From Haliotis rufescens (Eukaryota), in contig NW_025963957.1 in the NCBI RefSeq assembly GCF_023055435.1, positions 6,820,001-6,884,000 of the forward strand: a DNA stretch of 64,000 bases, read 5' to 3'. How positions within the stretch are numbered: the stretch's first letter is position 1; the number at the start of each line of letters is the position of its first letter. The notes below the pieces were generated by a model, which was given only the letters and a program-made list of their open reading frames with translations, searched no databases and had not been told where the DNA came from. Positions 1-64,000 of this stretch are shown here, in pieces. A program made the translations under genes and the position numbers.

Positions 1-3000
1 AAACCAGCTCGGAATGCTGTGACCCCAGTCACTACACTGTGTTACAGGGGGCATACGGCGCCACTCTCTCCCAGACAGGTAACTCTTGTATATGGAGCCA
101 CTCTCTCCCAGACAGGTAACTGTTGTATACGGAGCCACTCTCTACCAGACAGGTAACTGTTGTATACGGAGCCACTCTCTCCCAGACAGGTAACTGTTGA
201 ATACGGAGCCACTCTCTCCCAGACAGGTAACTGTTGTATACGGAGCCACTCTCTCCCAGACGGGTAACTGTTGTATACGGAGCCACTCTCTACCAGACAG
301 GTAACTGTTGTATACGGAGCCACTCTCTACCAGACAGGTAACTGTTGTATACGGAGCCACTCTCTCCCAGACAGGTAACTGTTGTATACAGAGCCACTCT
401 CTCCCAGACAGGTAACTGTTGTATACAGAGCCACTCTCTCCCAGACAGGTAACTGTTGTATACGGAGCCACTCTCTACCAGACAGGTAACTGTTGTATAC
501 GGAGCCACTCTCTCCCAGACAGGTAACTGTTGAATACGGAGCCACTCTCTCCCAGACAGGTAACTGTTGTATACGGAGCCGCTCTCTCCCAGACGGGTAA
601 CTGTTGTATACGGAGCCACTCTCTACCAGACAGGTAACTTTTGTATACGGAGCCACTCTCTACCAGACAGGTAACTGTTGTATACGGAGCCACTCTCTCC
701 CAGACAGATAACTATTGTATTCGGAGCCACTCTCTCCAAGACAGGTAACTGTTGTATATGGAGCCACTCTCTCCCAGACAGGTAACTGTTGTATACGGAG
801 CCGCTCTCTCCCAGACAGGTAACTGTTGTATACGGAGCCACTCTCTACCAGACAGGTAACTTTTGTATACGGAGCCACTCTCTCCCAGACAGGTAACTGT
901 TGTATACAGAGCCACTCTCTCCCAGACAGGTAACTGTTGTATACAGAGCCACTCTCTCCCAGACAGGTAACTGTTGTATACAGAGCCACTCTCTCCCAGA
1001 CAGGTAACTGTTGTATACGGAGCCACTCTCTCCCAGACAGGTAACTGTTGTATACGGAGCCACTCTCTCCCAGACAGGTAACTGTTGTATACGGAGCCAC
1101 TCTCTACCAGACAGGTAACTGTTGTATACGGAGCCACTCTCTCCCAGACAGGTAACTGTTGTATACAGAGCCACTCTCTCCCAGACAGGTAACTGTTGTA
1201 TACAGAGCCACTCTCTCCCAGACAGGTAACTGTTGTATACGGAGCCACTCTCTACCAGACAGGTAACTGTTGTATACGGAGCCACTCTCTCCCAGACAGG
1301 TAACTGTTGAATACGGAGCCACTCTCTCCCAGACAGGTAACTGTTGTATACGGAGCCACTCTCTCCCAGACGGGTAACTGTTGTATACGGAGCCACTCTC
1401 TACCAGACAGGTAACTTTTGTATACGGAGCCACTCTCTACCAGACAGGTAACTGTTGTATACGGAGCCACTCTCTCCCAGACAGATAACTATTGTATTCG
1501 GAGCCACTCTCTCCCAGACAGGTAACTGTTGTATATGGAGCCACTCTCTCCCAGACAGCTAACTGTTGTATACAGAGCCACTCTCTCCCAGACAGGTAAC
1601 TGTTGTATATGGAGCCGCTCTCTCCCAGACAGGTAACTGTTGTATACGGAGCCACTCTCTACCAGACAGGTAACTGTTGTATACGGAGCCACTCTCTCCC
1701 AGACAGGTAACTGTTGTATACAGAGCCACTCTCTCCCAGACAGGTTACTGTTGTATACAGAGCCACTCTCTCCCAGACAGGTACCTGTTGTATACAGAGC
1801 CACTCTCTCCCAGACAGGTAACTGTTGTATACGGAGCCACTCTCTACCAGACAGGTAACTGTTGTATACGGAGCCACTCTCTCCCAGACGGGTAACTGTT
1901 GAATACGGAGCCACTCTCTCCCAGACAGGTAACTGTTGTATACGGAGCCACTCTCTCCCAGACGGGTAACTGTTGTATACGGAGCCACTCTCTACCAGAC
2001 AGGTAACTTTTGTATACCGAGCCACTCTCTACCAGACAGGTAACTGTTGTATACGGAGCCACTCTCTCCCAGACGGGTAACTTCTGTATATGGAGACACT
2101 CAGATACTCAGAGGAAATTCTCTATTGTCATAATGCAACAACTGGCAGTAGTCGTGTCAGTATTCACCATGTTGGTTGTTTTTGCAGACCAAAAAATCCT
2201 AAAGATGATGTTCCTGTATGAGAAGCATGGCAAGGGTCTGAGTGATGCTAGGTATGTACACAGTCAGGACTGCTTCAAACACATAGCCATCCAAGCAACA
2301 TGTACCACCAAGCAAGGGACAGCTCTTGTAGCTCAGTCTCATGCTTTTAGGATGTTAGAAAATCTTCTGCAGTACATTAAGTTTTCTTAACATTGTACGG
2401 TACAATGCCGGAATTCAGATTTCTGGGGAGGTTATGGTGTAGTTATTATCTCTGCAGAGTTACATCCCTTGACATGCCAGAATCTGCTAGGCATGGGTTT
2501 AATTCTAATTAACAACCTTGGTTCTTCAGCACCATATCTGTTGTCATGTCTTTCACCAAGTTAGAGAAATGTCTGCTCCCACCATCACTTTCCATTTTCA
2601 CATGCAGTGATATGGACCAGTGAGGATCCGGGGCAGAATTGGTCTTCAGCAGCCCATGCTTGCTGTAAGAGGCGGCAACGCTTGTTGTAAGAGGCGACTA
2701 ACGGGATTGGGTGGTCAGGCTCCGTGACTTGCTTGTTTCCAAACTGCATAGATCATACTCATGATAAACAACATACAAACAAACACACAAACAAACATGT
2801 AGTGATATACTTGCATCCACGGGAGATCTCACTTATATCGCTTATGGACTCAAGCCATGTAAGGGCAGTTATGCATCGTCTTAAATTATATGTCTTGTTT
2901 TGTTAATATTATTTTAATACTTGTCAATTTTGTATGATCATGTGGGGTTTCTTTTTTGGACATTTGTAGAAGTCATTTAATAATTTTATAATTAAATTCT

Positions 3001-6000
3001 GATGTACAATATACGAATGTGTGTAGGTGATGTTGACTGTAGCTGTTGTACTGTAGGCCGTTCCTGTGGGGTCCGAAGGCGGTTGAGCACTACGCACTGC
3101 GGAAGAGCCTGGCGTCCTCCCTCCTCAAGCAGCCATCGATGGAGCAGATCGTGGAGGCCTTCGATGTCCGCACCATGTACAAGTCAGCTCTGAACTTCCC
3201 CATTGGCAGGAAGCTCATGGTAACCCGCAGTTCTTTTTAATGTCATCAAGTGGTCACAATCTTTGATCTTTGTCTGATTGTTTGTCATAGCTCCTTGTGG
3301 CATGGATCCTTGACTGACTGTGTGTCATGGCACCTGGTGGCATGGATCCTGAGTGAATGTGTCACAGCACCTGGTGGCATGGATCCTTGACTGATTGTGT
3401 GTCATAGCACCTGGTGGCATGGATCCTGAGTGAATGTGTCATAGCCCATGGTAGCATGGATCCTGAGTGAATGTGTCATAGCACCTGGTGGCATGGATCC
3501 TTGACTGATTGTGTGTCTTAGCACCTGGTGGCATGGATCCTGAGTGAATGTGTCATAGCACATGGTGGCATGGATCCTTGACTGATTGTGTGTCTTAGCA
3601 CCTGGTGGCATGGATCCTGAGTGAATGTGTCATAGCACCTGGTGGCATGGATCCTGAGTGAATGTGTCATAGCACATGGTGGCATGGATCCTGAGTGAAT
3701 ATGTCATCGCACCTGGTGGCATGGATCCTGAGTGAATGTGTCATAGCACCTGGTGGCATGGATCCTGAGTGAATGTTTCATAGCACATGGTGGCATGGAT
3801 CCTAAATGAATATGTCATAGCACCTGGTGGCATGGATCCTGAGTGAATGTGTCATAGCACATGGTGGCATGGATCCTGAGTGAATGTGTCATAGCACCTG
3901 GTGGCATGGATCCTGAGTGAATGTGTCATAGCACCTGGTGGCATGGATCCTGAGTGAATGTGTCATAGCACACGGTGGCATGGATCCTGAGTGAATATGT
4001 CATAGCACATGGTGGCATGGATCCTTGTCTGATTGTACTGTGATATAGCTGGAATATTGCTAAATGGTACAAGAAATAATCACTCAGTCAGTGCCATGCT
4101 ACAGAACTGGTCAGCACATGCGTGGCGATGCATCACTTGTGAACATGGCATGCTAATTCAGTCATACAAGCTTATTTCACCTCCTGCAAATATTAAACTA
4201 TTTGTATTGCTTCATTTGTTGTGTACTTGAATGTTTGTGCCTATTGTTCAACACATACTGATCATCTAATTACCGTCATCTCTGTTAGGTTCTTATTTTC
4301 CTCCTCGTAGATTAAGGCACCTGAAGTTTATGTACAGCATTACGTCCCTTGGTTGTGCCAGGATTCACTATTCATTGGTTGCTGTTAACAACTCATGACT
4401 GTGTGTATCTGTCTGCAGCCTGCGGAGGTGATGGAGGCGGAGGAGGTCAAGGCCGCTGTGGATGTGTATGATCCTTGCTTTGTGCTGCCGTTGTTCTGCG
4501 GACTCCTGACATCAGGTACGTCATCGTGTGCAGCTCATAACATCATCGTGTGCAGCTCGTAACATCATCGTGTACAGCTCGTAACATCATTGTGTGCAGC
4601 TCGTAACATCATCGTGTGCAGCTCGTAATATCGTGTGCAGCTCGTAACATCATCGTATACAGCTCGTAACACCATCATGTGCAGCTCGTAACATCATCGT
4701 GTGCAGCTCGTAACATCATCGTGTGCAGCTCATAACATCATTGTGTGCAGCTCGTAACATCATCCTGTGCAGCTCATAACATCATTGTGTGCAGCTCGTA
4801 ACATCATCGTGTGCAGCTCATAACATCATCGTGTGCAGCTCATAACATCATCATGTGCAGCTCGTAACACTAACTTGGATCTGCCAGTTGTCAGTCTTAA
4901 GCAGCAAGGCAGCGAGTTCTCCTGAATTCCTGAAGAAAAATATCTTCACACTCAATCCATACATGAGAGAATTTCCTCCTTGTCTAATGGTAGAAATAGA
5001 TTGTTGTCATGTTTTCTAGCATCGTCCCATGGCTGTCCACTAGCCTACATCAAAGTCTAGTTTCACCCTTAGCTAAAATTTGAGTGGACTATCGCACATA
5101 TCAATAGTCCATATGTGTTTGCTCACATTTAGGACAACATTTTGGTTGGCTCTCTAAGTTTGTGCGTTGATAGAATATGACTCGATCACATGAGAAATGT
5201 TGTGTTTTCATGTATCGCCATCCTCTGTATGTCCAGGGCTGCATTCCGGTAAACCTACACTGACCCCTGGATCCATTTCCGTAGATCTTGCAATCTCCAG
5301 TTAACTTGATTTTCCGTAACATTTTTCTGACCAATCAAATGTCAAGATAAGGAAAAAGAAAATGTGTAAGGGCGTAATTCTTATTGCCTTGAAACCAAAG
5401 CCACTGCAAAGACATCTTTTTCATCAAAAAGATTTTTGAGGGCTTTCTTTTACGTGTCACTGGTCAATGGGACTAGTCAATGGGACTGGTCAATGGGACT
5501 GGCCACCATGTTTTTATAATCCCAACCCAAAATTGAGGCTGGTTTGTAACTAATTGACTAATGAAAATCAAGGTCAGTAATTTGAGATCATGAGAACCAT
5601 GGAAATGGATCCAAGGGTTGGTGTAGGTGTACTGAAGTGCGAGCCCTGGAGATGGAGAGGAGGATGTATCGTGTCGTCTATCACGCCCTCAATGTCCAGG
5701 TACATTAACTATGTTGACAATATATCATCACAGCCATGTTAGGTGATAGTGGAATGGCTGACCTAAAGATACGTTTGATCTCATTATTTTGTTCGTAGAT
5801 TCCCTGGTAGACTGTCGGAAGTTTGTGTCCAGTCACTGCCTTGCGTACACGCTGACTGCCCTGAGCAGCCACGACCCGGGCATACGGAAGGCTGCGTACA
5901 CTATACTGGCTCGCTACGTGGACCACCTGTCGGGCGTCAAGTTCCATGAACGGCTTCAGGTGACCTACCTGCTGGACACATTACGAAACAGTGTCCAGGA

Positions 6001-9000
6001 ACCGAACCAACGTCTGTCTTGTCTCATCTCCCTCTTCCTGGCCCGCGTCTCACGTCTCATGCTACATCCAGGTAATAACAGCAACAATGTAGTCCTTAAT
6101 TAAATATACAGGTAAACACAGTTTATGTACAGGTGCTCATAGTCCTTAATTACGTATACAGGTAAACACAGTTTATGTATAGGTGCTCATAGTTCTTAAT
6201 TACATATACAGGTAAAACCAGTTTATGTATAGCTGCTCATTGTTCTTAATTACATATACAGGTAAAAACAGTTTTTGTATAGATGCTCATTGTTCTTAAT
6301 TACATAAAAGGTAAAAACAGTTTATGTAACACAATTCATATACAGTTTGTTCTGAACAGATATCCAGGTTTAAACAGTTTATGTACTCCTTAATTAGATA
6401 TCCAGGTAGGAACAATTAATGTACAGGTAGTTTGTGTTTGGATTATCTCATGAAAGACGGGTCAAGTTTGATGACCAGACCTATCTAGGTATGACAAGGC
6501 TTGGTTATTTATTGGGGCAATGTTGCTGGAATTTAACCAAATCTGATTACTAGATAGTCCATCATAATAGTTTGATTTGAAGCTAACAAGGTCAAATGTC
6601 CCATAAAACTGATGAGGTCAAGGGACATGTGACAATGACTCAAACTGGCTTAGGACTTATTTCAAGATACTTATTTCAAGAGATTTTGACCCAAATAGAT
6701 GAGATTATATAAGCAACATGTATATTCCAGTATCAGGTAAAACATTTGATGCATTTTTGGGAGTATTTTGAATTTGACACCAAAGTGTTTCTCCCAAGAC
6801 GAGCACATGTACCGGCAGATGAACAACTTCCTGCTGCTGAAGCCGAGCCTTGACACTGTGAACGTACCCGAGTTCTACAAGCTCTTCAACAGCGCCGACC
6901 AACAGGTAACCATGGCATCATTGCAGTGTATTTTAATTTGAAGCTACCTATTGACAGTGATTCCTAAATTTGCCAAAGCTTCAATAATTACATTGAAGTA
7001 ATACTTAATGGAATACTTGACTGTAGTTGAATGTTTCAGCACAGGAAGAAGAGTACATGTGTTACAATGGTGATAATGTCACAACTCAAAAGGGAGGGGA
7101 AACATATTATTTTTGGCTCAGTTCCCGGTGGCATCAGTGTTGGCATTGGCGTCAGTGTTCCCATCCTATTCCAAGCCATGACTTGAAAATCATTCAGTGT
7201 GTTTCAATTAAACCTGACATATACATTGCTCATCAGCTTAATGGGTGCCTTTGGCTATTTTTATTTTTTTCTAAAATTGATTATGTTACATTTCCATGGA
7301 AACAATTTAGACTTAGTCTCAAACAACTCTAGGCTTTGTTTCCAAGCTATAACTCTAAAACTAATGAATATTTTTTTAATGAAACTGTACATGTGATGGT
7401 TGAATGTTTCAGCACAGGAAGGAAAGGACGTGGATTGTGAGTCTTCTGGCGGACGGTCTGCGGGAGATGTCCGACTACAAGACGATGGAGAGAAGGTTCA
7501 CCTTCAAACTGCTGCAGGGATTCTGTGACTCCGCTATGAGCGACCAATTCTCCCAGGTGGGTTGGTGGCAGTTGGCATGGTAGTTCATATCTCATGGTTA
7601 AAGTGTGTGGTGCCAAAGACCAGGATTCCCCACGCTAGTGCAATGTGTAAGCCCGAGATGGTGTCCCCTTCAGGATGATAAATAATGTCAACCTCTTTCT
7701 ACTCCTATATTTGTTACTTCACTCATTTCCCAGAGAATCTGAAGTATAATGAATGAATAGTTTTCGAAAATAAGGCAGGTGTTGCTTGTGTTTCATTATG
7801 CAGTTAAATTTTGTGAATTGTGTTCACAAGTTGCCAGTTTGTTTATGATACCATTGTATTCCGTATTTGCAGAATTTCAAATACCCTGTGTATTCATAAA
7901 ATAAATTGTTCCATCCCAGCACTGTAGTTGTTAAAATAAACAGACACAGTTTCTTTTTTTTACTTGTATTCATCAGCCAACACAATACACCTCCTGCTCT
8001 CACACTGTCTGTCACACAACTGCCAGGCTCAAGCAAACCAAGATGGCCGCCGTAAAGTCATTCCCAAAGGATAGAGGGCAGTTTCGTATTCGAGGGGAAG
8101 TTTCGTATCCACATATTAACAGAAGTGATGCTGTCTTTCAGGTCCGAGTGTTGAGGATAGTTAAAGCAGCGTGTTCGGGTCGGCCGATGGCGGTAGATCT
8201 GGCCAAGAACCACGGCATCCTCACCTGGCTCAGTGGCTTCATCGTGAAACCGTAAGATCCTTGCCGCAGATGGCAACATCACAAATTATCTCTGGTTATT
8301 GGTGGTGGCCTCGACACTGTAGATCAACCTCAGCTGTCTTCCATATACCATGATCTACAGTGATGAAAATAACAAACATACTAAATACACAGGAAAGCAA
8401 TACTGTGTGCTCTCATGATTAGTTGTTACCATACCTTGTCTGTTTATTCTCAAAACTTTCTTCAAAACATCGATAATCTTCTGTTTACTGTATCAGGCAT
8501 TACCGTCTGCTTAAACGGAAAAGTGTCATTTTGTGTCAGCAGCAAATGGATTTCCTCACAGTCCTGCATTGTCATTGGCTAACAGACTTGAATTGTCTTG
8601 TCTCGGTAATGTTAACGTTAGTTTGGCACCAAATTCTGAATGTACTACTTAGGTTTTTGAATGATGGTGGTGCAGTAGCATACCAGCAGTCCTCAATTCT
8701 ACAAACGAGCTGTACAGTACTTGCATTTAAAAAAAATAATTATGTGTCTGATACTTGTCAGTTCTGATAATGACAGTTATCTGGAGCACTGCATGCTGGG
8801 AACCACTTGTTTATCTGGTCCAGATTTGATTACATGTGGTTGTGTGATGTAGTCGGAGTATCGTGAACTGCAGCAGAAACCAGAAATCACTCTCACTCAC
8901 TCACTCACTCAATCACTCACTCACTCACTCACTCACTCACTCACTGCGTCCTTCCAGGCTGCATGACGTGGAGCACTGTGAGCTGCTGGCCTCCATCCTC

Positions 9001-12377: not shown

Positions 12378-12383
12378 AATAAA
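12378..12383 (+). promoter_or_regulatory. Candidate polyadenylation signal of URB1
   Basis: AATAAA about 1.1 kb after the stop codon, followed by GT-rich sequence near 12415-12440. Confidence 0.45.
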
Positions 12384-24645: not shown

Positions 24646-24818
24646 ATTCCTCACTCACTCATGTGCTTATGTGATGGCATATTCAGAATGAGTTTGAAAA
24701 AACATACTTCACATTGAAGCGTTCACAAACAAAGTTTGCAATGTGTGACTTGGCTGATGTGTGCACTTGTATCTACTAACCAAGACCATCGATCACCCAT
24801 ACGATCCAGATACAATCA

Positions 24819-52700: not shown

Positions 52701-55700
52701 CACATCATGTGGGAGTCAGCCGGGGCTGTTCATCAGATCATGTGGGAGTCAGCGGGGGCCGTTTTTTAGATAATGTGGGAGTCAGCGGGGGCCGTTCATT
52801 AGATCATGTGGGAGTCAGCGGGGGCCGTTCATCACATCATGTGGGAGTCAGCGGGGGCCCTTCATCACATCATGTGGGAGTAAGCGTGGGCCGTTCATCA
52901 GTTCATGTGGGAGTCAGCCGGGGCTGTTCATCAGATCATGTGGGAGTCAGCGGGGGCCCTTCATCAGATAATGTGTGAGTCAGCGTGGGCCGTTCATCAG
53001 ATCATGTGGGAGTCAGCGTGGGCCGTTCATCAGATCATGTGGGAGTCAGCGGGGGCCGTTCATCACATCATGTGGGAGTCAGCCGGGGCCGTTCATCACA
53101 TCATGTGGGAGTCAGCGGGGGCCGTTCATCACATCATGTGGGAGTCAGCGGGGGCCGTTCATCAGATCATGTGGGAGTCAGCGGGGGCTCTTCATCACAT
53201 CATGTGGGAGTCAGCGGGGGCCGTTCATCACATCATGTGGGAGTCAGCCGGGGCCGTTCATCAGATCATGTGGGAGTCAGAGTGGGCCGTTCATCAGATC
53301 ATGTGGGAGTCAGCGGGGGCTCTTCATCAGATCATGTGGGAGTCAGCGGGGGCGTTCATCACATCATGTGGGAGTCAGCCGGGGCCGTTCATCACATCAT
53401 GTGGGAGTCAGCGGGGGCCCTTCATCAGATCATGTGGGAGTCAGCGGGGGCCCTTCATCAGATCATGTGGGAGTCAGCTGGGACTCTTCATCAGATCATG
53501 TGGGAGTCAGCCGGGGCCGTTCATCAGATCATGTGGGAGTCAGCGTGGGCCGTTCATCAGATCATGTGGGAGTCAGCGGGGGCCGTTCATCAGATCATGT
53601 GGGAGTCAGCCCGGGCCGTTCATCACATCATGTGGGAGTCAGCGGGGGCTGTTCATCACATCATGTGGGAGTCAGCGGGGGCCATTCATCAGATCATGTG
53701 GGAGTCAGCCGGGGCCGTTCATCAGATCATGTGGGAGTCAGCGGGGGCCCTTCATCAGATCATGTGGGAGTCAGCGGGGGCTCTTCATCACATCATGTGG
53801 GAGTCAGCGGGGGCCGTTCATCAGATCATGTGGGAGTCAGCGTGGGCCGTTCATCAGATCATGTGGGAGTCAGCTAGGGCTCTTCATCACATCATGTGGG
53901 AGTCAGCGGGGGCCCTTCATCACATCATGTGGGAGTCAGCCGGGGCTGTTCATCAGATCATGTGGGAGTCAGCGGGGGCCGTTTTTTAGATAATGTGGGA
54001 GTCAGCGGGGGCCGTTCATTAGATCATGTGGGAGTCAGCGGGGGCCGTTCATCACATCATGTGGGAGTCAGCGGGGGCCCTTCATCACATCATGTGGGAG
54101 TAAGCGTGGGCCGTTCATCAGTTCATGTGGGAGTCAGCCGGGGCTGTTCATCAGATCATGTGGGAGTCAGCGGGGGCCCTTCATCAGATAATGTGTGAGT
54201 CAGCGTGGGCCGTTCATCAGATCATGTGGGAGTCAGCGTGGGCCGTTCATCAGATCATGTGGGAGTCAGCAGGGGCCCTTCATCACATCATGTGGGAGTC
54301 AGCGGGGGCTGTTCATCAGATCATGTGGGAGTCAGCGGGGGCTCTTCATCACATCATGTGGGAGTCAGCGGGGGCTGTTCATCACATCATGTGGGAGTCA
54401 GCGGGGGCCCTTCAGATCATGTGGGAGTCAGCGGGGGCTCTTCATCACATCATGTGGGAGTCAGCGGGGGCCGTTCATCACATCATGTGGGAGTCAGTGG
54501 GGGCTGTTCATCACATCATGTGGGAGTCAGCGGGGGCCCTTCATCAGATTATGTGGGAGTCAGCCGGGGCCGTTCATCACATCATGTGGGAGTCAGCGGG
54601 GGCCGTTCATCACATCATGGTTGAGCCAGCGGGGGCCGTTCATCACATCATGTGGGAGTCAGCGGGGGCCGTTCATCAGATCATGTGGGGCTGCTTCCAT
54701 CTTTTCCTCAGCTCAAACCTAGATGAGGACAACCTCACAAAGTGAATATCCATTCTGTGACTGTAAAACAATTGTTCATAGCGCATTAATAGAAAATTAT
54801 ATCTCTTGGGAAAAGACTACATAACTGCGTGGGTAAGAATTTGTGGGTGTGGGTGGGTGTGTGCGGGCGCACGGTAGAGTGGGTGAATTCAGAATGCCTG
54901 AAATTTGGTTTCTATACATTTAGTTGTATTTTATAAAAATGTTCTTCCTTCCCCATCCCCCTCATGTCTGATTTGTGGGTTTCTGCAGGGTGAGTTAATT
55001 GTTTTTGTTGCAGGGTGAGTTAATTGTTTGTGTTGCTTGTTGCAGGGTGAGTTAATTGTTTTTGTTGCAGGGTGAGTTAATTGTTTGTGTTGCTTGTTGC
55101 AGGGTGAGTTAATTGTTTGTGTTGCTTGTTGCAGGGTGAGTTAATTGTTTGTGTTGCTTGTTGCAGGGTGAGTGTATTGGAGGAGCCGTGCTCAGTCTGC
55201 TGCATGAGAAGACGTCCACGCTGATCGGGTAAACACAGCTCCTAGGCAGGAGAAACATTTGTTGGAATAAGTTGTCTAGTCTTACACTAGGCACACTAAT
55301 AGGCTGATCACCTACCCAGTACCTGACAGCTTCTCAAGTACCACACGAGTCGCCCGGATGGCCCAGTGGTCTAAGGTGCACTTTGTTGGTCCAGGTTCTG
55401 CTGGTCAGGGGTTTGAATCCCGGTTAACCCTGACCATGATCCCTGGTGTTGTCATGTCATGTATCAAAGGAAGCTACAGATCTTATGTTAGTGCAGAGTA
55501 AGCGTAAGTGGATAATAAAAATAAAAGCACCTGTTTACTTGTTTGGATTGGATCCGTTATGTTTCCTGTTTGGTATCTGGGTTTTGGGTGCTTGTTATGT
55601 CGTTTGTGATATTTCTGATGTAAGGATGAAATGGTTTTGTTTGAGATATGTTGTCTTCTCTTCTTGCAGTGATGCTAAAAGTCAAGAGCTGTGCCTCTAC

Positions 55701-58700
55701 CTAACACAGTCGGTGAGTACAGCTTGATCTCGCGAGTCTTCAAACCAGTAAACCCACTTGAATAATGAGAAAGTAAAGAATACAAAGGGGATTTACCCAT
55801 GAGTTGTTAATCTTAATATTTGCTCATCCATTTTTTGGTTGAAGTCACTGTGGTCATCTAAAGCTGTTCCACAGTCAGTAGGGACACCAGTCTGAATGGT
55901 TGTATGGTAGAGTTGTCTTCTTCTTCTTTATGCTGTGGGAACGGTCATTACGGGAATCTTGACATCTCTAACTCCACATGTAGTGACAATTATATTGTTG
56001 TGTATGTCTTCAGGAATGCCATCATAATGGATTTTAAAAACTTTTATGACAAACTTTCTATTTCCCAGATGAATTTAATGTTTTGTTCGTTTAGGCAGAT
56101 TTGTTCGACATTGCACAAATGGAAAAGTACTCCACTTTCCTTGTATATTCTTATTGTACCAGTTACATGACAGTTGAAATAATAGGGACATTTTAATTGA
56201 AAAACAGGAAATAATTTAGTTGGTGTTAAGAGTATTCGGCGTAACGACAGTCATTACATGCTTGTAAACATGACGGTCAGTCGGTTGTGAGTTCAACTCC
56301 AGGCCTGGTTGTAGGCTGCCTAGCACTGTGGGGAGCTGTGAGTGTTGGCAGTGATAGCATAGAGAACTCTGCGAACAGGGTGTCACTGGGGAACTGTGAC
56401 TGGTCGCAGTGATAGCGTAGAGAACTCCGCGAACAGGGTGTCACTGTGAGGAACTATGATTGGTCGCAGTGATAGCGTAGAGAACTCCGCGAACAGGGTG
56501 TCACTGTGAGGAACTGTGATTGGTCGCAGTGATAGCATAGAGAACTCCACGAACAGGATGTCACTGTGGGGAACTGTGACTGGTGGCATTTGTAGCGTAG
56601 AGAACTCCGCGAACAGGGTGTCACTGTGGGGAACTGTGACTGGTCGCAGTGGTAGCATAGAGAACTCCGCGAACAGGGTGTCACTGTGGGGAACTGTGAC
56701 TGGTCGCAGTGATAGCGTAGAGAACTCCACGAACAGGGTGTCACTGTGAGGAACTATGATTGGTCGCAGTGATAGCGTAGAGAACTCCGCGAACAGGGTG
56801 TCACTGTGAGGAACTGTGATTGGTCGCAGTGATAGCGTAGAGATCTCCACGAACAGGATGTCACTGTGGGGAACTGTGACTGGCGGCATTTGTAGCGTAG
56901 AGAACTCCGCGAACAGGGTGTCACTGTGGGGAACTGTGACTGGTCGCAGTGGTAGCGTAGAGAACTCCGCGAAATGGGTGTCACTGTGGGGAACTGTGAC
57001 TGGTCGCAGTGATAGCGTAGAGAACTCCGCGAACAGGGTGTCACTGTGGGGAACTGTGACTGGTCGCAGTGATAGCGTAGAGAACTCCGCGAACAGGGTG
57101 TCACTGTGGGGAACTGTGACTGGTCGCAGTGGTAGCATAGAGAACTCCGCGAACAGGGTGTCACTGTGGGGAACTGTGACTGGTCGCAGTGATAGCGCAG
57201 AGAACTCCGTGAACAGGGTGTCACTGTGGGGAACTGTGACTGGTGGCAGTGGTGGCGTAGAGAACTCCGCAAACAGGGTGTCATTGTGGGGAACTGTGGC
57301 AGTGGTAGCGTAGAGAACTCTATGAACGGCTGTCACTGTGCGGAGCTTGATGCCCTTTGTACCTGCTGCTGTGTATAGTTAAAGGTGTCTCAGTCTTCAG
57401 CAATATGATATGTGAAGTGAAAGGGATCGAAATAAAACCGTTGATGGTTTGTTTACAGGCTTGTGTTCCGTACTTCGAGATCTTGGAGAAGTGGATCTAC
57501 AAAGGCATTATATCCGACCCTTACACTGAGGTTTGTACTTGTCATAGATTATACCTACCTACCTACCTACATACATATATATATCTTTACTCTGACCCTC
57601 CACAGAGATCATGTCAACCAATCATTATGAAACCATTTGGCAATGGCCATTTTGTGTGGTGGATGGCTTGCACTATGGTTTTATTTCTCCAACTCCAGAC
57701 AGTTGTAAGAGTATTGTCCAAGATCACAGTTGAAATATTTTTGAAAGCTGACATCTGATTGGCCCTAAGCCCCACTATTGGTGGTAGAAGTTCCCCTGAG
57801 ATGTGGTGGGTTTGTCAGATGTTCACGGAGAAGGTGAACTATACATCTGATTTTTGAAAAACGACTGAATTCATCTTCAGTGCAATATCTCTAATGGGCA
57901 AGAAATCTGTTGATGTGTGACACAAGCCATATGTGTAGGCTGGGATGTGCCGTGCACCAAGTGTCCTTGTGTTTATGGAGCCGTGCAGCAAGTGGTCTTT
58001 GTTTCAGTTTCTGGTGGAGGAGAACGAGACCATTCAGAAGGAGAAACTACAGGAGGAGTACAACGATGCATATCCTTTCTGGATCTTGTCAAAAAATAAA
58101 AACTTTGAAAATATCATTCCACTATGGAAAAAGCTGAATGAAACAATGTCTGATTTTATTATTCCTCTGAAAACAATGAATAGAATAAGTGAATAAGAAT
58201 ACTTTGTTAAGAACAAATTAAGAAGTGCTCTTTAAGGATGGCAGAACTAAGACTTCTCTATTCCATTCTTTGTGTACGTCAACCTTAAACTTTGTAAGTT
58301 ATTCCAATGTGAGTTTAGGTAATGGTAGGTCTTAGCAAGCCTTCTGGCTAACAAGGGCAAAAGTTGTATTCTGCAACAAGGCGCATACATCACCTTGATT
58401 ATGCTGCATACTGGTACAGTGAAATTGTATAATCACTATACGCAGGAGACTTTGAGTCAGTGCATTAAGCCATGCATACACTTATGTTGAGTGTCCCTTG
58501 TGGTATAAGCCACGTATACACGGGATGTGAGTGTCCCTAGTGCTTTAAGCCACATATACACTGTATGTTGAGTGTCCCTAGTGCTTTAAGCCATGTATAC
58601 ACTGTATGTTGAGTGTCCCTAGTGCTATAAGCCATGTATACACTGTATGTTGAGTGTCCCTTGTGGTATAAGCCACGTATACACTGGATGTGAGTGTTCC

Positions 58701-61700
58701 AAGTGCTTTAAGCCACGTATACACTGTATGTTGAGTGTCCCTAGTGGTATAAGCAACGTATACACTGGATGTTGAGTGTCCCTAGTGCTATAAGCCACGT
58801 ATACACAGTATGTTGAGTGTCCCTACTGTTATAAGCCATGTATACACTACGTTGAGTGTCCCTAGTGCTATACGCCTCTGTCCCTAGTGCTATAAGCCAC
58901 GTATACACTGTATGTTGAGTGTCCTAAGTGCTATAAGCCACTGTCCCTAGTGCTATAAGCCATGTATACCCTGTATGTTGAGTGTCCCTAGTGCTATAAG
59001 CCATGTATACACTGTATGTTGAGTGTCCCTAGTGCTATAAGCCATGTATACCCTGTATGTTGAGTGTCCCTAGTGCTATAAGCCATGTATACACTGTATG
59101 TTGAGTGTCCCTAGTGCTATAAGCCACGTATACACTGTATGTTGAGTGTCCCTAGTGCTATAAGCCATGTATACACTGTATGTTGAGTGTCCCTAACTGT
59201 GCCACCTACTGGGAGCAGCACTACACCATCTGTAGAGAGAGGATCCCTGTGTTCCTGGAGACGATGGCAGACAAGATCCTCAACACCGGGAAGTACCTCA
59301 ACGTGGTCCGACTCTGTGGTAGGTGATCTCACCAGTGATATGTTTACAAAGAAGTTGTGGGTTCTGCCCCCGGTAACCCATGCTTATTGTAAGAGGTGAC
59401 TACATGGACTGGGTGGTCAGGCCCGGAGACATGGCTGATGGCACGTCACTGTACCCGGATGCATGGACTGGGTGGTCAGGCCTAGAGACATGGCTGATGG
59501 CACGTCACTGTATCCGGATGCATGGACTGGGTGGTCAGGCCTAGAGACATGGCTGTTGTCACGTCACTGTATCCGGATGCATGGACTGGGTGGTCAGGCC
59601 GGAGACATGGCTGATGGCACGTCACTGTACCCGGATGCATGGACTGGGTGGTCAGGCCTAGAGACATGGCTGATGGCACGTCACTGTATGCGGATGCATG
59701 GACTGGGTGGTTAGGCCTAGGAGACATGGACTGCGTGGTCAGGCCCGGAGACATGGCTGATGGCACGTCACTGTATCCGGATGCATGGACTGGGTGGTCA
59801 GGCCTAGAGACATGGCTGTTGTCACGTCACTGTATCCGGATGCATGGACTGGGTGGTCAGGCCCAGAGACATGGCTGATGGCACGTCACTGTATCCGGAT
59901 GCATGGACTGGGTGGTCAGGCCTAGAGACATGGCTGATGGCACGTCACTGTATCCGGATGCATGGACTGGGTGGTCAGGCCCGGAGACATGGCTGATGGC
60001 ACGTCACTGTATGCGGATGCATGGACTGGGTGGTTAGGCCTAGAGACATGGACTGCGTGGTCAGGCCCGGAGACATGGCTGATGGCACATCACTGTATCC
60101 GGATGCATGGACTGGGTGGTCAGGCCTAGAGACATGGCTGTTGTCACGTCACTGTATCCGGATGCATGGACTGGGTGGTCAGGCCCGGAGACATGGCTGA
60201 TGGCACGTCACTGTATCCGGATGCATGGACTGGGTGGTCAGGCCTAGAGACATGGCTGATGGCACGTCACTGTATCCGGATGCATGGACTGGGTGGTCAG
60301 GCCCAAAGACATGGCTGATGGCACGTCACTGTATCCAGATGCATGGACTGGGTGGTCAGGCCCGGAGACATGGCTGATGGCACGTCACTGTATCCGGATG
60401 CATGGACTGGGTGGTCAGGCCCAAAGACATGGCTGATGGCACGTCACTGTATCCGGATGCATGGACTGGGTGGTCAGGCCTAGAGACATGGCTGATGGCA
60501 CGTCACTGTATCCGGATGCATGGACTGGGTGGTCAGGCCCGGAGACATGGCTGATGGCACGTCACTGTATCCGGATGCATGGACTGGGTGGTCAGGCCCA
60601 AAGACATGGCTGATGGCACGTCACTGTATCCGGATGCATGGACTGGGTGGTCAGGCCCGGAGACATGGCTGATGGCACGTCACTGTATCCGGATGCATGG
60701 ACTGGGTGGTCAGGCCCAGAGACATGGCTGATGGCACGTCACTGTATCCAGATGCAAGGACTGGGTGGTCAGGCCTAGAGACACGGCTGATGGCACGTCA
60801 CTGTACCCGGATGCATGGACTGGGTGGTCAGGCCGGAGACATGGCTGATGGCACGTCACTGTATCCGGATGCATGGACTGGGTGGTCAGGCCGGAGACAT
60901 GGCTGATGGCACGTCACTGTACCCGGATGCATGGACTGGGTGGTCAGGCCCAGATGCATGGACTGGGTGGTCAGGCCTAGAGACATGGCTGTTGTCACGT
61001 CACTGTATCCGGATGCATGGACTGGGTGGTCAGGCCGGAGACATGGCTGATGGCACGTCACTGTATCCAGATGCATGGACTGGGTGGTCAGGCCTAGAGA
61101 CATGGCTGATGGCACGTCACTGTATGCGGATGCATGGACTGGGTGGTTAGGCCTAGGAGACATGGACTGGGTGGTCAGGCCCGGAGACATGGCTGATGGC
61201 ACGTCACTGTATCCAGATGCATGGACTGTTGCTTATAGCATCAACCACAGTTTTGTGTATTGTCTACATTTTTGACCAGTTTCACTGATAAATACACCCA
61301 ACCTTCATCAACTACATAAAGCTGACACTGTGATGTGGTTGAAATATGATGGACCTGATAGGCATGGGGTTTAGTGAAGAAAGGAGAGGTGTTTTGACTT
61401 AAGGTGTGGAAGTGGTCAGGGTTCAAGATTCTTCTCATTTGAGCCAAGGGTGTAGTTATGGGTAGTTTGTTGTTTTAGATACGTAGTTCCTTTGGCGATG
61501 TTAATCATATGAATGGGGGTACAGGAGGCCCGGTCGTCTAAGACGCCGCATTTCACAGCGTAGAGTTGCGCTCCTTGTGCACTCCAGAAATCTATGGTTG
61601 TGGCTTCAAATCCCGGTTCACCCCGATTATGTTTCTAGGTTTGTTAGCACCATACTCGTGGTTTTACCAAAGTGTTAAACGTCTGAGACCTGCATCACTT

Positions 61701-63077
61701 GGGGCTGTCCTCCCACATTAAGCTGAAATGTCGTGATATGACTGGAATACTGGTCAAAGTGGTTATAAACCCAACTCAATCACATATGGAGCCAGTGATG
61801 AATGTACTTTTGCACATGTGGTAAAAAGCCTGGAAGCTGCTGGCCATATGAATGGCAGTATTGAATTCAGGTATTGAATAGGGTATTAATGAGCTCTGTG
61901 AAAACGAAGGGCAAACCTTCTAAACTATGAGTATTGAGTTAAGAATGTGCATACCTGAACATCCCTATGGGTTCTGCCTCCCAAATAAAATACGTCTGTA
62001 TCCTTGGTATTTGCAGCTCGTGATGTGAAGTGTCCGTATGCCGAGGAGATTGTGTACACTCTGAAGGAGAGGCGGTACTATGACCAGATAGATAAAGCGT
62101 ATCACTACGCCAGCCGCCTCCTGCTCGACCTCCTCATGGAGGAGAAGGAACTCATGGCTCGCATCAGGTGAGGAGGTCACAGACTTTCTGAAGGTCTTCA
62201 AGGCAAGAAATGAGATGTATTTCAGAACGGATCCCAGTGGTCAACAAAGAAAGACGGACTTCCGGTCATCAGCATCAGTTTGGGGTTAAACGATCCGGCC
62301 CCCCCAAAAACCTTTCTTGTTGTATTTCAATTGACCATGTTGACCCACACATTGATACATCTTACATCTAATAGGCGTAAACATTGAACCAAATGAATGC
62401 ACTACTTCCTGCTGTGTTTCAGGTCAATAAAGCACTACTTCCTGCTGTGTTTCAGGTCAATAAAGCACTACTTCCTGCTGTGTTTCAGACCAATAAAGCA
62501 CTACTTCCTGCTGTGTTTCAGGTCAATAAAGCACTACTTCCTGCTGGACAAGGGCGACTTCATGGTGCAGTTCATGGACATGACGGAGGAGGAGATGAAG
62601 CAGAACATCGAAGATATCCTTGACTTGTTTGATAGGCATTACTTGGAAGTTGACGGACGACAAAGTAGACACAATTTTTGGATAATAACTTCTTTAATAC
62701 AGTAAAAGGACATATATAACGGTATAAGGATCTAAACTGAAACATCGCCTTTACAGTATTAAAGAAATTGTTATCCATAAATTCTGTCTACTTTGTCGTT
62801 AACACTTCTTTGAACGGTAGTTGTGTCAAAGTGTTGCAGGACGTAGATATTTACCATTTGGTGAAACTCAGGACTAGAAGCAGTCCCTGTGAAGCAATGT
62901 TTAAAATCAGTATTGTATTTTGTTGCATGTTTAATGTCAGGTGAAGTGTGATATCATTTTGAGATATTAGAATTCCTTAACCCACGTACATATCATGCCG
63001 ACTCGTCTCGAGTCCCTCTTGGAGCTGGCTCTCAGGACAAGCACAGCAAACGTGGACCCCTTCAAGGACGACCTCAG
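40797..63077 (+). CDS. TUBGCP2: Gamma-tubulin complex component 2 (GCP2), 5' 21 coding exons (577 codons), continues past window
   Basis: Exons 40797-40849, 41440-41521, 42145-42236, 43600-43657, 43924-44055, 44144-44243, 44328-44416, 44680-44757, 45055-45136, 46707-46784, 49607-49674, 49881-49925, 51675-51767, 55167-55228, 55670-55712, 57459-57530, 58008-58069, 59206-59318, 62017-62167, 62522-62613, 62990-63077, with phases consistent. Peptides MSEFKVHHHVSEL, FEYGLVNHAL, LSLQKLWFYIQP, PYFEILEKWIYKG, KILNTGKYLNVVR, RSIKHYFLLDKGDF, DPFKDDL are characteristic of GCP2. Confidence 0.96.
40929..41046. repeat. 16-bp minisatellite, about 7 copies
   Basis: GACCTAGTGCAACGAA. Confidence 0.9.
41567..41944 (+). 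mobile_element. tRNA(Leu-like)-headed SINE with internal 29-bp tandem expansion
   Basis: Head GGTGGCCGAGTGG...GGTTTGAACCCC, body CCTCCCACATTAAGCTGACA, (CACT)n tail. TGATATAACTGGAATACTGTTCAAAGTCG x4 at ~41802-41914. Relatives at 61525-61785, 15620-15742 and a head at 55350-55435. Confidence 0.7.
42612..42977. mobile_element. hAT-like MITE
   Basis: Ends TATGGCTGGGAC and GTCCCAGCCATG; 8-bp TSD ATATTGAC/ATATGGAC (7/8). Confidence 0.7.
43085..43575. mobile_element. Palindromic MITE with ~100-bp imperfect TIRs
   Basis: CAATCTCGTTAAGATCAAATCTTAGTTCTCG pairs with CGAGAACTAAGATCTGATTTTCATGAGATTG, and pairing continues inward. Confidence 0.75.
44533..44592. repeat. (CACCT)n microsatellite
   Basis: Seen directly in the sequence. 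Confidence 0.95.
45114..46008 (+). repeat. 58-bp minisatellite, about 15.4 copies, copying a TUBGCP2 exon end and donor
   Basis: GTTCATGATAGATGAGGGTCTAG|GTGAGTCGCTGCAAGATATGTACCGTGTTATTGTG; the first unit is the real exon end. Confidence 0.97.
46170..46625. mobile_element. hAT-like MITE
   Basis: Ends TAGGGCTGCAACGA and TCGTAACAGTCCTA; perfect 8-bp TSD TTGCTGAC; subterminal GAATA repeats. Confidence 0.85.
46937..49262. repeat. Compound 11/12-bp minisatellite
   Basis: Interleaved modules GTGTCCCATGCA, GTGTAACCTG(C/G)A and GTCCCATCAAT. Confidence 0.95.
49949..50368. repeat. Degenerate 11-bp-based repeat
   Basis: TGATCC(A/T)TGTA variants grouped in 33- and 66-bp blocks. Confidence 0.85.
51787..54688. 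repeat. 33-bp intronic minisatellite, about 88 copies
   Basis: GTGGGAGTCAGCGGGGGCCGTTCATCAGATCAT; higher-order duplication with a 1220-bp offset (52761 vs 53981). Confidence 0.97.
54984..55173 (+). repeat. 25/32-bp repeat copying a TUBGCP2 acceptor and exon start (7 copies)
   Basis: GCAG|GGTGAGT at 54985, 55010, 55042, 55067, 55099, 55131 and 55163; the last is the real acceptor. Confidence 0.95.
56325..57340. repeat. 60-bp minisatellite, about 16 copies
   Basis: TGGTCGCAGTGATAGCGTAGAGAACTCCGCGAACAGGGTGTCACTGTGGGGAACTGTGAC; 300-bp higher-order period. Confidence 0.97.
58070..59205 (+). other. U12-type (minor spliceosome) AT-AC intron in TUBGCP2
   Basis: 5' end ATATCCTTT; branch-point-like GTCCCTAAC at 59189-59197; ends in GCCAC. 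Removal restores ...YNDA/YWEQHY... in frame. Confidence 0.9.
58460..59195 (+). repeat. 41-bp minisatellite running into the U12 branch point
   Basis: GTGTCCCTAGTGCTATAAGCCA(T/C)GTATACACTGTATGTTGA. Confidence 0.95.
59403..61228 (+). repeat. ~59-bp minisatellite derived from a SINE body, about 31 copies
   Basis: CATGGACTGGGTGGTCAGGCCTAGAGACATGGCTGATGGCACGTCACTGTATCCGGATG. Confidence 0.95.
61525..61785 (+). mobile_element. Same SINE family as 41567-41944
   Basis: Colinear similarity over the whole length. Confidence 0.7.
62399..62546 (+). repeat. 33-bp in-frame repeat copying a TUBGCP2 acceptor and exon start
   Basis: GTCAATAAAGCACTACTTCCTGCTGTGTTTCAG; acceptor AGs end at 62422, 62455, 62488 and 62521. 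Confidence 0.95.
62614..62989 (+). other. U12-type AT-AC intron in TUBGCP2
   Basis: 5' end ATATCCTTG; perfect U12 branch point TTCCTTAAC at 62973-62981; ends in GTAC. Removal restores ...NIED/IMPTRLESLLELALR in frame. Confidence 0.93.
62626..62800. mobile_element. Penelope-like palindromic element, third copy, inside the U12 intron
   Basis: Inverted arms ACGACAAAGTAGACACAATTT...AAATTCTGTCTACTTTGTCGT; central AACGGTATAAGGATCTAAACTGAAACATCGCC. Confidence 0.6.
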
Positions 63078-64000
63078 GTAGGGACGGAGAGAATGGTTCA
63101 TGTTCAAGGATGACCTCAGGTAGGGAGGGAGAGATTGGTTCATGTTCAAGGATGACCTCAGGTAGTGAGGGAGAGATTGGTTCATGTTCAAGGATGCCCT
63201 CAGGTAGGGAGGGAGAGATTGGTTCATGTTCAAGGATGACCTCAGGTAGGGAGGGAGAGATTGGTTCATGTTCAAGATTGAACTCAGGTAGGGAGGGAGA
63301 GATTGGTTCATGTTCAAGGATGACCTCAGGTAGGGAGGGAGAGATTGGTTCATGTTCAAGAACGAACTCAGGTAGGGAGGGAGAGATTGGTTCATGTTCA
63401 AGGATGACCTCAGGTAGGGAGGGAGAGATTGGTTCATGTTCAAGGATGACCTCAGGTAGGGAGGGAGAGATTGGTTCATGTTCAAGGATGACCTCAGGTT
63501 GGTTCATGTTCAAGGATGCCTTCAGGTAGTGAGGGAGAGATTGGTTCATGTTCAAGGATGACCTCAGGTTGGTTCATGTTCAAGATTGAACTCAGGTAGG
63601 GAGGGAGAGATTGGTTCATGTTCAAGGATGACCTCAGGTAGGGAGGGAGAGATTGGTTCATGTTCAAGGATGACCTCAGGTAGTGAGGGAGAGATTGGTT
63701 CATGTTCAAGGATGACCTCAGGTAGGGAGGGAGAGATTGGTTCATGTTCAAGGATGGCCTCAGGTTGGTTCATGTTCAAGGATGCCCTCAGGTAGGGAGG
63801 GAGAGATTGGTTCATGTTCAAGGATGACCTCAGGTAGGGAGGGAGAGATTGATTCATGTTCAAGGATGACCTCAGGTAGTGAGGGAGAGATTGGTTCATG
63901 TTCAAGAACGAACTCAGGTAGGGAGGGAGAGATTGGTTCATGTTCAAGGATGACCTCAGGTAGGGAGGGAGAGATTGGTTCATGTTCAAGGATGACCTCA
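63061..64000 (+). repeat. 42-bp (some 28-bp) minisatellite copying a TUBGCP2 exon end and donor, about 23 copies, runs off the window
   Basis: TTCAAGGATGACCTCAG|GTAGGGAGGGAGAGATTGGTTCATG. Confidence 0.97.

What the first reader, a model, noticed from the sequence alone, without database searches (positions are those of the whole stretch)
53..64000. Recurrent splice-junction-seeded minisatellites: arrays of decoy splice sites at many exon boundaries
Seen: in two unrelated genes, at least seven tandem arrays or duplications have a unit that straddles a real exon-intron boundary. Donors are at 53-2093, 6069-6430, 45114-46008 and 63061-64000; acceptors are at 7026/7399, 54984-55173 and 62399-62546. 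An eighth array overlaps a U12 branch point (58460-59205), and several others start within about 5-80 nt of a donor (3285, 4520, 9143, 40929, 49949, 51787). The units share no sequence, so this is not one mobile element. In the three large donor arrays the intronic copies are homogenised with each other but differ from the exon copy at a few exonic positions, while most keep the splice signal. Inference: some process favours tandem amplification at exon boundaries (for example transcription- or splicing-coupled breaks, or chromatin boundaries). Splicing must then select the first of up to 55 near-identical donors, or the last of several acceptors. This could be a lineage-wide source of tunable unproductive splicing and intron growth. 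I do not know of a description of it, but I cannot search the literature.
Basis: partly seen in the sequence, partly recalled or inferred. Interest (0 to 1): 0.9.

Follow-up and report, generated by a model that had tools for sequence, protein, structure and literature searches.

The report
Exon-boundary minisatellites in abalone genes
In an abalone-like genome, many intronic minisatellites are tandem copies of the neighbouring exon end plus its splice site, yet the cell still splices at the outermost copy; this matches the 'mirage' repeats described in amphioxus in 2002, here in a mollusc and at high density.

Summary
The window holds the 3' half of URB1 and the 5' two-thirds of TUBGCP2 from a Haliotis-like genome. 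Five arrays strictly span a real exon/intron boundary: donors at 78|79, 45136|45137 and 63077|63078, acceptors at 55166|55167 and 62521|62522. There is also a degenerate donor array, a two-copy acceptor duplication and an array ending in a U12 branch point.

RNA contigs from three studies join exons at the last acceptor copy and the first donor copy. All 122 strong decoy donors would cause premature stops.

I mapped both genes completely, including 60 kb outside the window. On the donor side, 13 of 38 arrays span or start within 25 nt of a donor, against 3.4-4.8 expected (P 7e-6 to 2e-4). This also holds outside the window (6 vs 1.4). The acceptor side is not clearly above chance. A third neighbouring gene has a 56-bp donor array.

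It is the amphioxus 'mirage' phenomenon, and human F7 intron 7 is a tested analogue. I found no mollusc report. First readers of this scan noted about 41 similar cases elsewhere in this genome, all unchecked. Regulatory use is untested.

The parts
1..11295 (+). 3' part of URB1/NopRA1 (exons 24-34 of 34). Window exons: ..-78, 2188-2251, 3057-3219, 4419-4515, 5799-6071, 6799-6905, 7413-7556, 8142-8251, 8958-9104, 9508-10481, 11030-11295.
   Evidence: Pfam NopRA1 hits are collinear. The only library hit is H. asinina URB1-like. Spliced alignment. The whole-gene model is an open 2250-codon frame.
53..2101 (+). Donor array: 37-bp unit x 55, made of the last 26 nt of the exon plus GTAACTnTTGT. The real donor is at 78|79. 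The array fills the intron 79-2187 except for its last 86 nt.
   Evidence: 51 of 54 inner copies keep GT and 43 have the identical 9-mer. Every decoy would give a premature stop.
3283..4025 (+). 37-bp x 20 array starting 63 nt after donor 3219|3220. No decoy donor.
4521..4869 (+). 22-bp x 16 array starting 5 nt after donor 4515|4516. No decoy donor.
6072..6430 (+). Degenerate donor array: 50-bp unit, TRF 6090-6328. It begins at donor 6071|6072 and has 7 decoy CAG|GTAAA-type donors.
   Evidence: Similarity of the first copy to the unit is weak (0.16).
7019..7422 (+). Two-copy acceptor duplication. The 23-nt acceptor context of exon 7413 is repeated exactly 373 nt upstream, giving a decoy exon start at 7040.
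   Evidence: Use of the decoy gives a premature stop.
9143..9277 (+). 23-bp x 6 array, 38 nt after donor 9104|9105.
40797..64000 (+). TUBGCP2 (gamma-tubulin complex component 2), exons 1-20 of at least 28. Window exons: 40797-40849, 41440-41521, (one exon not located), 43600-43657, 43924-44055, 44144-44243, 44328-44416, 44680-44757, 45055-45136, 46707-46784, 49607-49674, 49881-49925, 51675-51767, 55167-55228, 55670-55712, 57459-57530, 58008-58069, 59206-59318, 62017-62167, 62522-62613, 62990-63077.
   Evidence: PDB GCP2 matches. Pfam GCP_N_terminal hits are collinear. RNA joints. Open 834-codon frame over exons 3-28. Boundaries read.
40930..41049 (+). 16-bp x 7.5 array, 80 nt after donor 40849|40850.
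45114..46008 (+). Donor array: 58-bp unit x 15 (23 nt exon + 35 nt intron). The real donor is at 45136|45137. All 14 decoys carry the identical TAG|GTGAGT.
   Evidence: The array is locus-specific in the genome. The exon itself rests on frame continuity and splice consensus only; there was no PDB hit.
49943..50366 (+). 33/22-bp array starting 17 nt after donor 49925|49926. No decoys.
51788..54689 (+). 33-bp x 88 array starting 20 nt after donor 51767|51768. No decoys. Locus-specific.
54984..55173 (+). Acceptor array: 32-bp unit x 6. The real acceptor is at 55166|55167. Six decoy acceptors, each followed by G|GTGAGT.
58070..59205 (+). U12-type AT-AC intron: ATATCCTT at the 5' end and TCCCTAAC 8 nt before the ..AC 3' end. 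It holds the 41-bp x 18 array 58459-59195, whose last unit runs into the branch site.
   Evidence: The flanking exons abut at GCP2 residues 426/427 in PDB alignments. No RNA was laid here.
59403..61228 (+). 59-bp array (about 30 copies) starting 84 nt after donor 59318|59319.
62399..62546 (+). Acceptor array: 33-bp unit x 4.5 (8 nt intron + 25 nt exon). The real acceptor is at 62521|62522. Three decoys are in frame, adding 11 aa each.
   Evidence: RNA contigs of X6, X10 and X19 join 62167|62522.
62614..62989 (+). Second U12-type AT-AC intron, confirmed by RNA.
   Evidence: Joint 62613|62990 with AT..AC ends in three RNA runs, absent from DNA run X7. Sequence.
63061..64000 (+). Donor array: 42-bp unit x 23 (17 nt exon + 25 nt intron), running to 64021 just beyond the window. 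The real donor is at 63077|63078. 15 decoys are identical and 23 are strong.
   Evidence: RNA contigs end the exon at 63077 with the exon-specific letters. The array end and next exon (64278) are.

Best explanation
These are locally born minisatellites of the 'mirage' kind, in a Haliotis-like (abalone) genome that is very rich in minisatellites (about 29% of this window).

Proposed sequence of events:
1. A short tandem duplication of 16-100 bp arises by slippage or repair. It happens to include an exon end plus its 5' splice site, or a 3' splice site plus an exon start.
2. It is tolerated because the spliceosome keeps using the copy attached to the exon. That is the first of a run of donors, as shown experimentally for the human F7 intron-7 VNTR, and the last of a run of acceptors.
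3. Unequal exchange or slippage expands the run and homogenises the inner copies.
4. The exon-attached copy is held by selection on the protein and stays outside the homogenisation.

Inner donor copies stay intact and strong, but all of them would give premature stops, so any use is unproductive. The arrays are the main source of intron length here.

There is also a real excess of arrays at or just after donors (about 3-fold). Its cause is not known. I take it to reflect a mutational or retention bias at the 5' end of introns.

Shown: the anatomy, the exon boundaries, the site choice for two arrays, the enrichment, and the local origin.
Inferred: the mode of birth and expansion, neutrality, and the cause of the donor bias.
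For: - Arrays and units.
- Organism and gene models.
- Exon copy versus homogenised inner copies, and intact decoys.
- RNA contigs from three studies use the last acceptor (62521|62522) and the first donor (63077|63078). The joints are absent from the DNA run.
- An independent DNA run has contigs running from unique flank into both arrays.
- Arrays are single-locus in the 1.33-Gb genome.
- Enrichment. Strict spanning: 8 vs 3.0 expected. Donor side within 25 nt: 13 vs 3.4 expected, or vs 4.8 under a per-intron null. Replicated outside the window: 6 vs 1.4.
- More cases outside the window, in URB1 exons 2, 10 and 21 and in a third gene, a cation channel with a 56-bp unit holding 50 nt of exon.
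- Precedents: mirages and first-donor scanning in F7.
Against: - Site choice is shown by RNA for only two arrays, and from assembled contigs, which hide minor isoforms.
- Copy-number polymorphism, a hallmark of mirages, could not be tested.
- The acceptor-side association is not above chance.
- Seven donor-abutting arrays carry no decoys and show no similarity to the junction, so a simple 'duplication of the boundary' does not explain them.
- A tolerance filter alone cannot produce an excess over uniform placement, so part of the mechanism is missing.
- The genome-wide extent rests on unchecked first-reader notes. My own random sample was too small.
Confidence: 0.75

Rival explanations
1. Chance geometry. 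Minisatellites are so common, and the unique parts of the introns so short, that arrays touch exon boundaries without any preference.
For: Unique intron sequence is only 39-900 nt in most array-bearing introns. The collapsed null already predicts 3-5 boundary arrays per side out of 38. The acceptor side fits it (7 vs 3.4-4.8, P 0.05-0.19).
Against: Donor side: 13 vs 3.4-4.8 expected, P 7e-6 to 2e-4. This is replicated in DNA outside the window (6 vs 1.4, P 0.002). Units with strong donor 9-mers: 6 of 28 vs 1.4 expected from shuffled units.
Confidence: 0.1
2. A mutational hotspot at 5' splice sites, for example breaks or slippage coupled to transcription, splicing or chromatin, actively seeds and anchors arrays at intron starts.
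For: The donor-side excess covers both arrays that span the donor and arrays that start 3-20 nt after it. The asymmetry between donor and acceptor sides fits it. In this window arrays look denser in the genes than in the 29-kb spacer (rough count, not tested).
Against: There is no direct evidence for any break or slippage process. The asymmetry could equally come from selection, since decoy acceptors lie upstream of the real one and are more harmful. Only three genes were examined.
Confidence: 0.3
3. The decoy arrays are maintained by selection as regulators. They would act as tunable unproductive splicing, U1-binding platforms, or, for the 32-bp unit, recursive-type sites.
For: Decoys stay intact and as strong as the real site: 43, 14, 15 and 24 identical 9-mers in four arrays. 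All donor decoys lead to premature stops.
Against: RNA contigs show only the canonical joints. Intact decoys are expected anyway from recent homogenisation (inner copies up to 99.9% identical). Older arrays have lost their sites. The 32-bp unit has an extra G between acceptor and donor, so it is not a true recursive site.
Confidence: 0.08
4. Assembly artefact, or repeats carried by a mobile element.
For: Long near-identical arrays are hard to assemble, so the copy numbers may be inexact.
Against: Contigs of an independent DNA run (X7) pass from unique flank into the arrays and from the exon copy into the next copy. Units contain the host gene's own exon sequence. The three arrays queried (one spanning a donor, two not) occur only at their own locus in the genome.
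Confidence: 0.03

Closest known systems
[quoted passage not shown] Reported for Adh3 (Canestro et al. 2002, as cited), the globin genes BflGb6/9 (PMC3087553) and PGBD5 and troponin C (PMC3902484).
   Same: - The tandem unit holds an exon end or start plus its splice signal.
- Both 5' and 3' boundaries are affected.
- Copies keep AG/GT, yet normal splicing is undisturbed.
- Inner units evolve in concert and the boundary unit is excluded.
- Units are unrelated between loci.
   Different: - The host is a mollusc, not a cephalochordate.
- Arrays are much longer, at 15-55 copies against 2-6 in the globins.
- There are several per gene.
- A quantified donor-side excess is added here.
- Length polymorphism and somatic instability, shown for Adh3, were not testable.
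Human F7 intron 7 37-bp VNTR (PMC1557585).
   Same: The first repeat spans the exon/intron boundary. The authentic donor is followed by identical pseudo-donors that stay silent. The most upstream site is chosen.
   Different: It is a single locus with a handful of repeats. The selection rule was proven by minigene mutagenesis, whereas here it is only inferred from RNA contigs and reading frames.
Variable internal tandem repeats at exon-intron boundaries of human segmental-duplication genes (PMC2812944).
   Same: Tandem repeats overlap splice junctions and can alter intron structure.
   Different: Those repeats often create new introns or alternative transcripts in young paralogues. Here single-copy housekeeping genes keep their ancestral splicing.
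Recursive splice sites (juxtaposed 3'/5' splice sites). Cited from general knowledge, not from a paper read here.
   Same: The 32-bp acceptor unit carries CAG followed by GTGAGT.
   Different: One extra G separates the two signals, so re-splicing would add a base per cycle. There is no evidence of use.

Membership tests
Mirage minisatellites (tandem duplications of exon/intron boundaries) | Head-to-tail repetition of a short unit (about 10-160 bp) inside a gene. | tested here: met
   TRF. Units of 16-97 bp and 2-55 copies.
Mirage minisatellites (tandem duplications of exon/intron boundaries) | The unit contains a real exon/intron boundary, that is, exon sequence plus the splice signal. | tested here: met
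   Boundaries come from homology, RNA and frame continuity. There are five strict cases in the window and three more in URB1 outside it. A further case lies in a third gene. The exon part of the unit is 7-50 nt.
Mirage minisatellites (tandem duplications of exon/intron boundaries) | Both 5' and 3' boundaries can be duplicated. | tested here: met
   Donor arrays at 53, 45114 and 63061. Acceptor arrays at 54984 and 62399, plus the 7019/7399 duplication.
Mirage minisatellites (tandem duplications of exon/intron boundaries) | Regular splicing is kept although the copies carry GT/AG. | tested here: met
   RNA contigs of three runs use 62521|62522 and 63077|63078. For the other arrays this is inferred only, from open reading frames and collinearity with H. 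asinina URB1.
Mirage minisatellites (tandem duplications of exon/intron boundaries) | Inner units evolve in concert and the boundary unit is excluded. | tested here: met
   Inner copies are 97% and 99.9% identical to their consensus. The exon copy differs at 2 and 5 positions.
Mirage minisatellites (tandem duplications of exon/intron boundaries) | Length instability, seen as allelic copy-number polymorphism. | not testable with these tools
   Only assembled contigs of short-read runs were available, and they break inside the arrays.
U12-type AT-AC intron | 5' end /ATATCCTT, a TCCTTAAC-like branch site about 8-15 nt before the 3' end, AT..AC termini, and an exon join seen in RNA. | tested here: met
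   62614-62989: sequence, and the AT..AC joint in three RNA runs. 58070-59205: sequence only, with the flanking exons abutting in PDB alignments.
Recursive splice site | A 3' splice site directly abutting a 5' splice site (..CAG|GTRAGT). | tested here: not met
   The 32-bp unit reads CAG-G-GTGAGT, with one extra base.
Satellite carried by a mobile element | The same unit is present at many dispersed loci. | tested here: not met
   Own-genome searches of three arrays return only the array itself, plus weak matches of about 68% identity.
TUBGCP2 / URB1 (host genes) | Collinear matches to GCP_N_terminal and solved GCP2 chains. Collinear matches to NopRA1 and a URB1 orthologue. | tested here: met

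The most novel reading that the evidence does not exclude
Abalone genomes have a genome-wide process, tied to transcription or splicing, that seeds or anchors minisatellites at 5' splice sites. A large share of intronic arrays, about a third here, would then be donor-anchored, and hundreds of genes would carry ladders of tens of identical intact decoy donors. That would be a main route of intron growth in this lineage. It would also be a natural, massively parallel test of how the spliceosome picks one site among identical ones. It may have arisen convergently with amphioxus in highly polymorphic broadcast spawners.
Probability: 0.25. Interest if true: 0.75.

Novelty: new member of a known kind. 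Interest (0 to 1): 0.5.

Why it matters
- It extends 'mirage' repeats from a few amphioxus genes to a mollusc, which suggests they are a general by-product of minisatellite-prone genomes.
- It gives, as far as I could find, the first test against a proper null. Part of the boundary association is geometry, the donor-side excess is real, and the acceptor side is not clearly enriched.
- Ladders of 14-50 identical, strong 5' splice sites in housekeeping genes are natural substrates for testing first-site (scanning or exon-definition) rules and NMD surveillance.
- They show how introns can grow several-fold (here up to about 20-fold) from their own boundary.
- In practice, such arrays will mislead gene predictors and short-read aligners in abalone genomes.

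Tried and rejected
- My first guess was amphioxus. It was rejected because the only library relative of the URB1 exon is Haliotis asinina.
Following the tool's own advice I laid a part with fewer copies (60700-63480). The 37-bp and 58-bp donor arrays therefore have no RNA test.
I redid the step using coordinates only.
- PDB gave no match for the URB1 exon 5762-6100 or for the GCP2 exon 45055-45136. That exon rests on frame continuity and splice consensus.
- One GCP2 exon between 41522 and 43599 was not located.
- I tested whether donor-abutting arrays without decoys are decayed junction copies. There was no signal.
Their 9 arrays are too few (1 donor-like unit vs 0.7 expected), and the one candidate (L015) has no recognisable exon beside it.
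- Rfam and tRNA scans of the window found nothing.
- The original Canestro 2002 paper is not held, so it is cited only through PMC3087553 and PMC3902484.
- Literature searches for abalone or mollusc reports of boundary minisatellites found only an ordinary intronic minisatellite in H. discus hannai TSSK1-like.
- The joined spliced models were never sent to any search tool. They were used only locally, to count stops.
Full report
**What the window is.** The 352-codon open frame at 9443-10498 has a single relative among 1.8 billion representative proteins. It is XP_067675055.1, 'nucleolar pre-ribosomal-associated protein 1-like' of Haliotis asinina, at 70% identity. Other exons are 88-94% identical. 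The window is G000:C179:6820001-6884000 of a 1.33-Gb assembly. It therefore comes from an abalone or a close relative, not from amphioxus as I first guessed.

The first gene is URB1/NopRA1 (Pfam NopRA1, collinear hits). The second is gamma-tubulin complex component 2. Its exon pieces match solved GCP2 chains and Pfam GCP_N_terminal in collinear order.

**Exon maps.** I aligned the H. asinina protein to the window and to 30 kb fetched upstream. This gives 34 URB1 exons that join into an unbroken frame of 2250 codons ending in a stop.

For GCP2 I read the boundaries from the sequence, guided by the PDB and Pfam matches. Exons 3-28 form an unbroken 834-codon frame. One small exon between 41522 and 43599 was not found. 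The joined models were used only locally to count stops and were not sent to any search.

Boundary-spanning donor arrays:
- 53-2101: 37 bp x 55, exon ends at 78.
- 45114-46008: 58 bp x 15, exon ends at 45136.
- 63061-64021: 42 bp x 23, exon ends at 63077.

Boundary-spanning acceptor arrays:
- 54984-55173: 32 bp x 6, exon starts at 55167.
- 62399-62546: 33 bp x 4.5, exon starts at 62522.

Other claims:
- The 50-bp array at 6072-6430 starts at the donor with a degenerate first copy and carries seven good decoy donors.
- The acceptor of exon 7413 is repeated exactly (23 nt) 373 nt upstream.
- The 41-bp array 58459-59195 ends inside the TCCCTAAC branch site of an AT-AC intron.
- The six 'near-donor' arrays start 5-80 nt after donors.

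Inner copies are 97% (37-mer) and 99.9% (58-mer) identical to their consensus, while the exon copy differs at 2 and 5 positions. 51 of 54 and 14 of 14 inner copies keep GT. I built a donor weight matrix from the 58 real GT donors of the two genes. With it, 122 decoy donors score at least 6 bits, and 96 of them have exactly the real 9-mer. Every one would lead to a premature stop. The three decoy acceptors of the 33-bp array are in frame, adding 11 residues each.

Contigs of three runs from three studies, recorded as probable RNA, give three results:
- They join 62167|62522 with GT..AG ends, which is the last acceptor copy.
- They join 62613|62990 with AT..AC ends, confirming a U12-type intron.
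- They end the next exon at 63077 with no mismatch, which is the first donor copy with its exon-specific letters.

None of these joints is in the DNA run. Contigs of that independent DNA run pass from unique flank into the acceptor array, and from the exon copy into the second donor copy. The arrays are therefore not an artefact of this assembly. Contigs cannot exclude rare use of inner sites.

**Is it more than chance?** About 29% of the window is minisatellite. The unique part of many introns is only 40-900 nt, so some boundary contact is expected.

I used a null in which each array is collapsed to one unit and that unit is placed uniformly along the collapsed gene, excluding placements wholly inside exons.
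- Strict spanning: 8 observed vs 3.0 expected (P 0.006).
- Donor side, spanning or starting within 25 nt, over both complete genes (38 arrays): 13 observed vs 3.4 expected (P 7e-6).
- Acceptor side, same 38 arrays: 7 observed vs 3.4 expected (P 0.05).
- Strictest null, conditioning on each array's own intron: donors 13 vs 4.8 (P 2e-4), acceptors 7 vs 4.8 (not significant).

Thus roughly a third of the association is geometry, the donor-side excess is real, and the acceptor side is unproven.

Two classes must be kept apart. Arrays whose unit carries the junction are true decoy ladders. Arrays that merely begin 3-20 nt after a donor carry no decoys and show no residual similarity to the junction.

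**More cases nearby.** Outside the window, URB1 has several further arrays:
- a 38-bp x 30 donor array with 31 nt of exon;
- a weak 16-bp donor array;
- a 97-bp two-copy acceptor duplication;
- arrays starting at -1 and +3 of donors.

The rest of GCP2 has arrays starting at +3 and +18 of donors, and one ending 4 nt before an acceptor.

A third gene on the opposite strand is an Ion_trans/PKD-like channel. One of its exon ends is followed by about 30 copies of a 56-bp unit, of which 50 nt are exon.

First readers of this scan noted 41 findings with similar wording in this genome. These are unchecked. My own random sample was too small to test genome-wide frequency.

**Origin.** Units are unrelated to one another. 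Three arrays searched against the whole genome match only themselves. The spanning units contain the host gene's own exon sequence, so they arose in place and not from a mobile element.

**What is known.** The phenomenon has a name.
- Tandem repeats spanning exon-intron boundaries in amphioxus Adh3 were called 'mirages' (Canestro et al. 2002, cited in PMC3087553 and PMC3902484; the original is not held).
- The globin paper reports both boundary types, intact AG/GT signals, undisturbed splicing, allelic copy-number differences, and concerted evolution with exclusion of the boundary copy.
- PGBD5 and troponin C are further cases.
- In human F7 a 37-bp VNTR spans the exon 7 boundary. Mutagenesis showed that the pseudo-donors are functional but that the most upstream site is chosen by a 5'-to-3' scanning-type process.
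- Human segmental-duplication genes also carry variable repeats at exon-intron boundaries.
- I found no description in abalone or other molluscs, only an ordinary polymorphic intronic minisatellite in H. discus hannai.

**Verdict.** The feature is real and striking in scale: up to 55 copies, about 120 strong decoy donors in two housekeeping genes, and introns expanded several-fold, up to about 20-fold. It belongs to a known kind. New here are the host lineage, the density, and the quantified donor-side bias.

The best reading is neutral or slightly harmful local minisatellites, tolerated because the exon-attached site wins. The cause of the donor bias and any regulatory role remain open.

Noticed in passing
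L010:5046-6877 (G000:C179:6904001-6914000), minus strand: A third, unrelated gene (Ion_trans/PKD-like cation channel) has an exon end followed by about 30 tandem copies of a 56-bp unit, made of 50 nt of exon plus GTAAAG. An in-frame TAA follows each donor.
   Followed up: partly
window 58070-59205 and 62614-62989: There are two U12-type AT-AC introns in one gene (TUBGCP2). The second is confirmed by RNA joints. The exon between 62990 and 63077 has a U12 acceptor and a 23-copy donor ladder.
   Followed up: yes
window 61537-61815 and 62560-62838: Two very high-copy dispersed elements, with summed contig depth of 10^4-10^6 in every run. The second is a palindromic, MITE-like element inside the U12 intron. 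Similar SINE-like pieces recur at about 2690-2900, 18150-18560, 41550-41730 and 50380-50660.
   Followed up: no
window 54984-55173: Each 32-bp unit carries an acceptor directly followed by G and a consensus donor (CAG-G-GTGAGT), because the real exon starts with the conserved Gly-Glu-Cys codons. It resembles a recursive splice site but is offset by one base.
   Followed up: partly
window 62399-62546: The 33-bp acceptor unit contains AATAAA, and its decoy acceptors are in frame (+11, +22, +33 residues). This is the only array where use of an inner site would yield an intact protein.
   Followed up: partly
window 8892-8945, 44534-44593; big coordinates 106527-106560: Microsatellites (CTCA)13, (CCTCA)12 and (ATG)11 lie 12-90 nt upstream of acceptors. 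CTCA/ACTC-type runs recur across the region.
   Followed up: no
window 20207-21239, minus strand: Open frames there look like a decayed Tc1/mariner-type transposase, judged by eye from the translation. They lie in the 29-kb spacer, next to two large arrays (21940-24632 and 24820-25688).
   Followed up: no
window 11296-40796 versus the two genes: Minisatellites look several times denser in the two genes than in the intergenic spacer. This is a rough count from one window, not a test.
   Followed up: no
window 41522-43599: One small GCP2 exon of about 30 codons, expected from the length of solved GCP2 chains, was not located.
   Followed up: no
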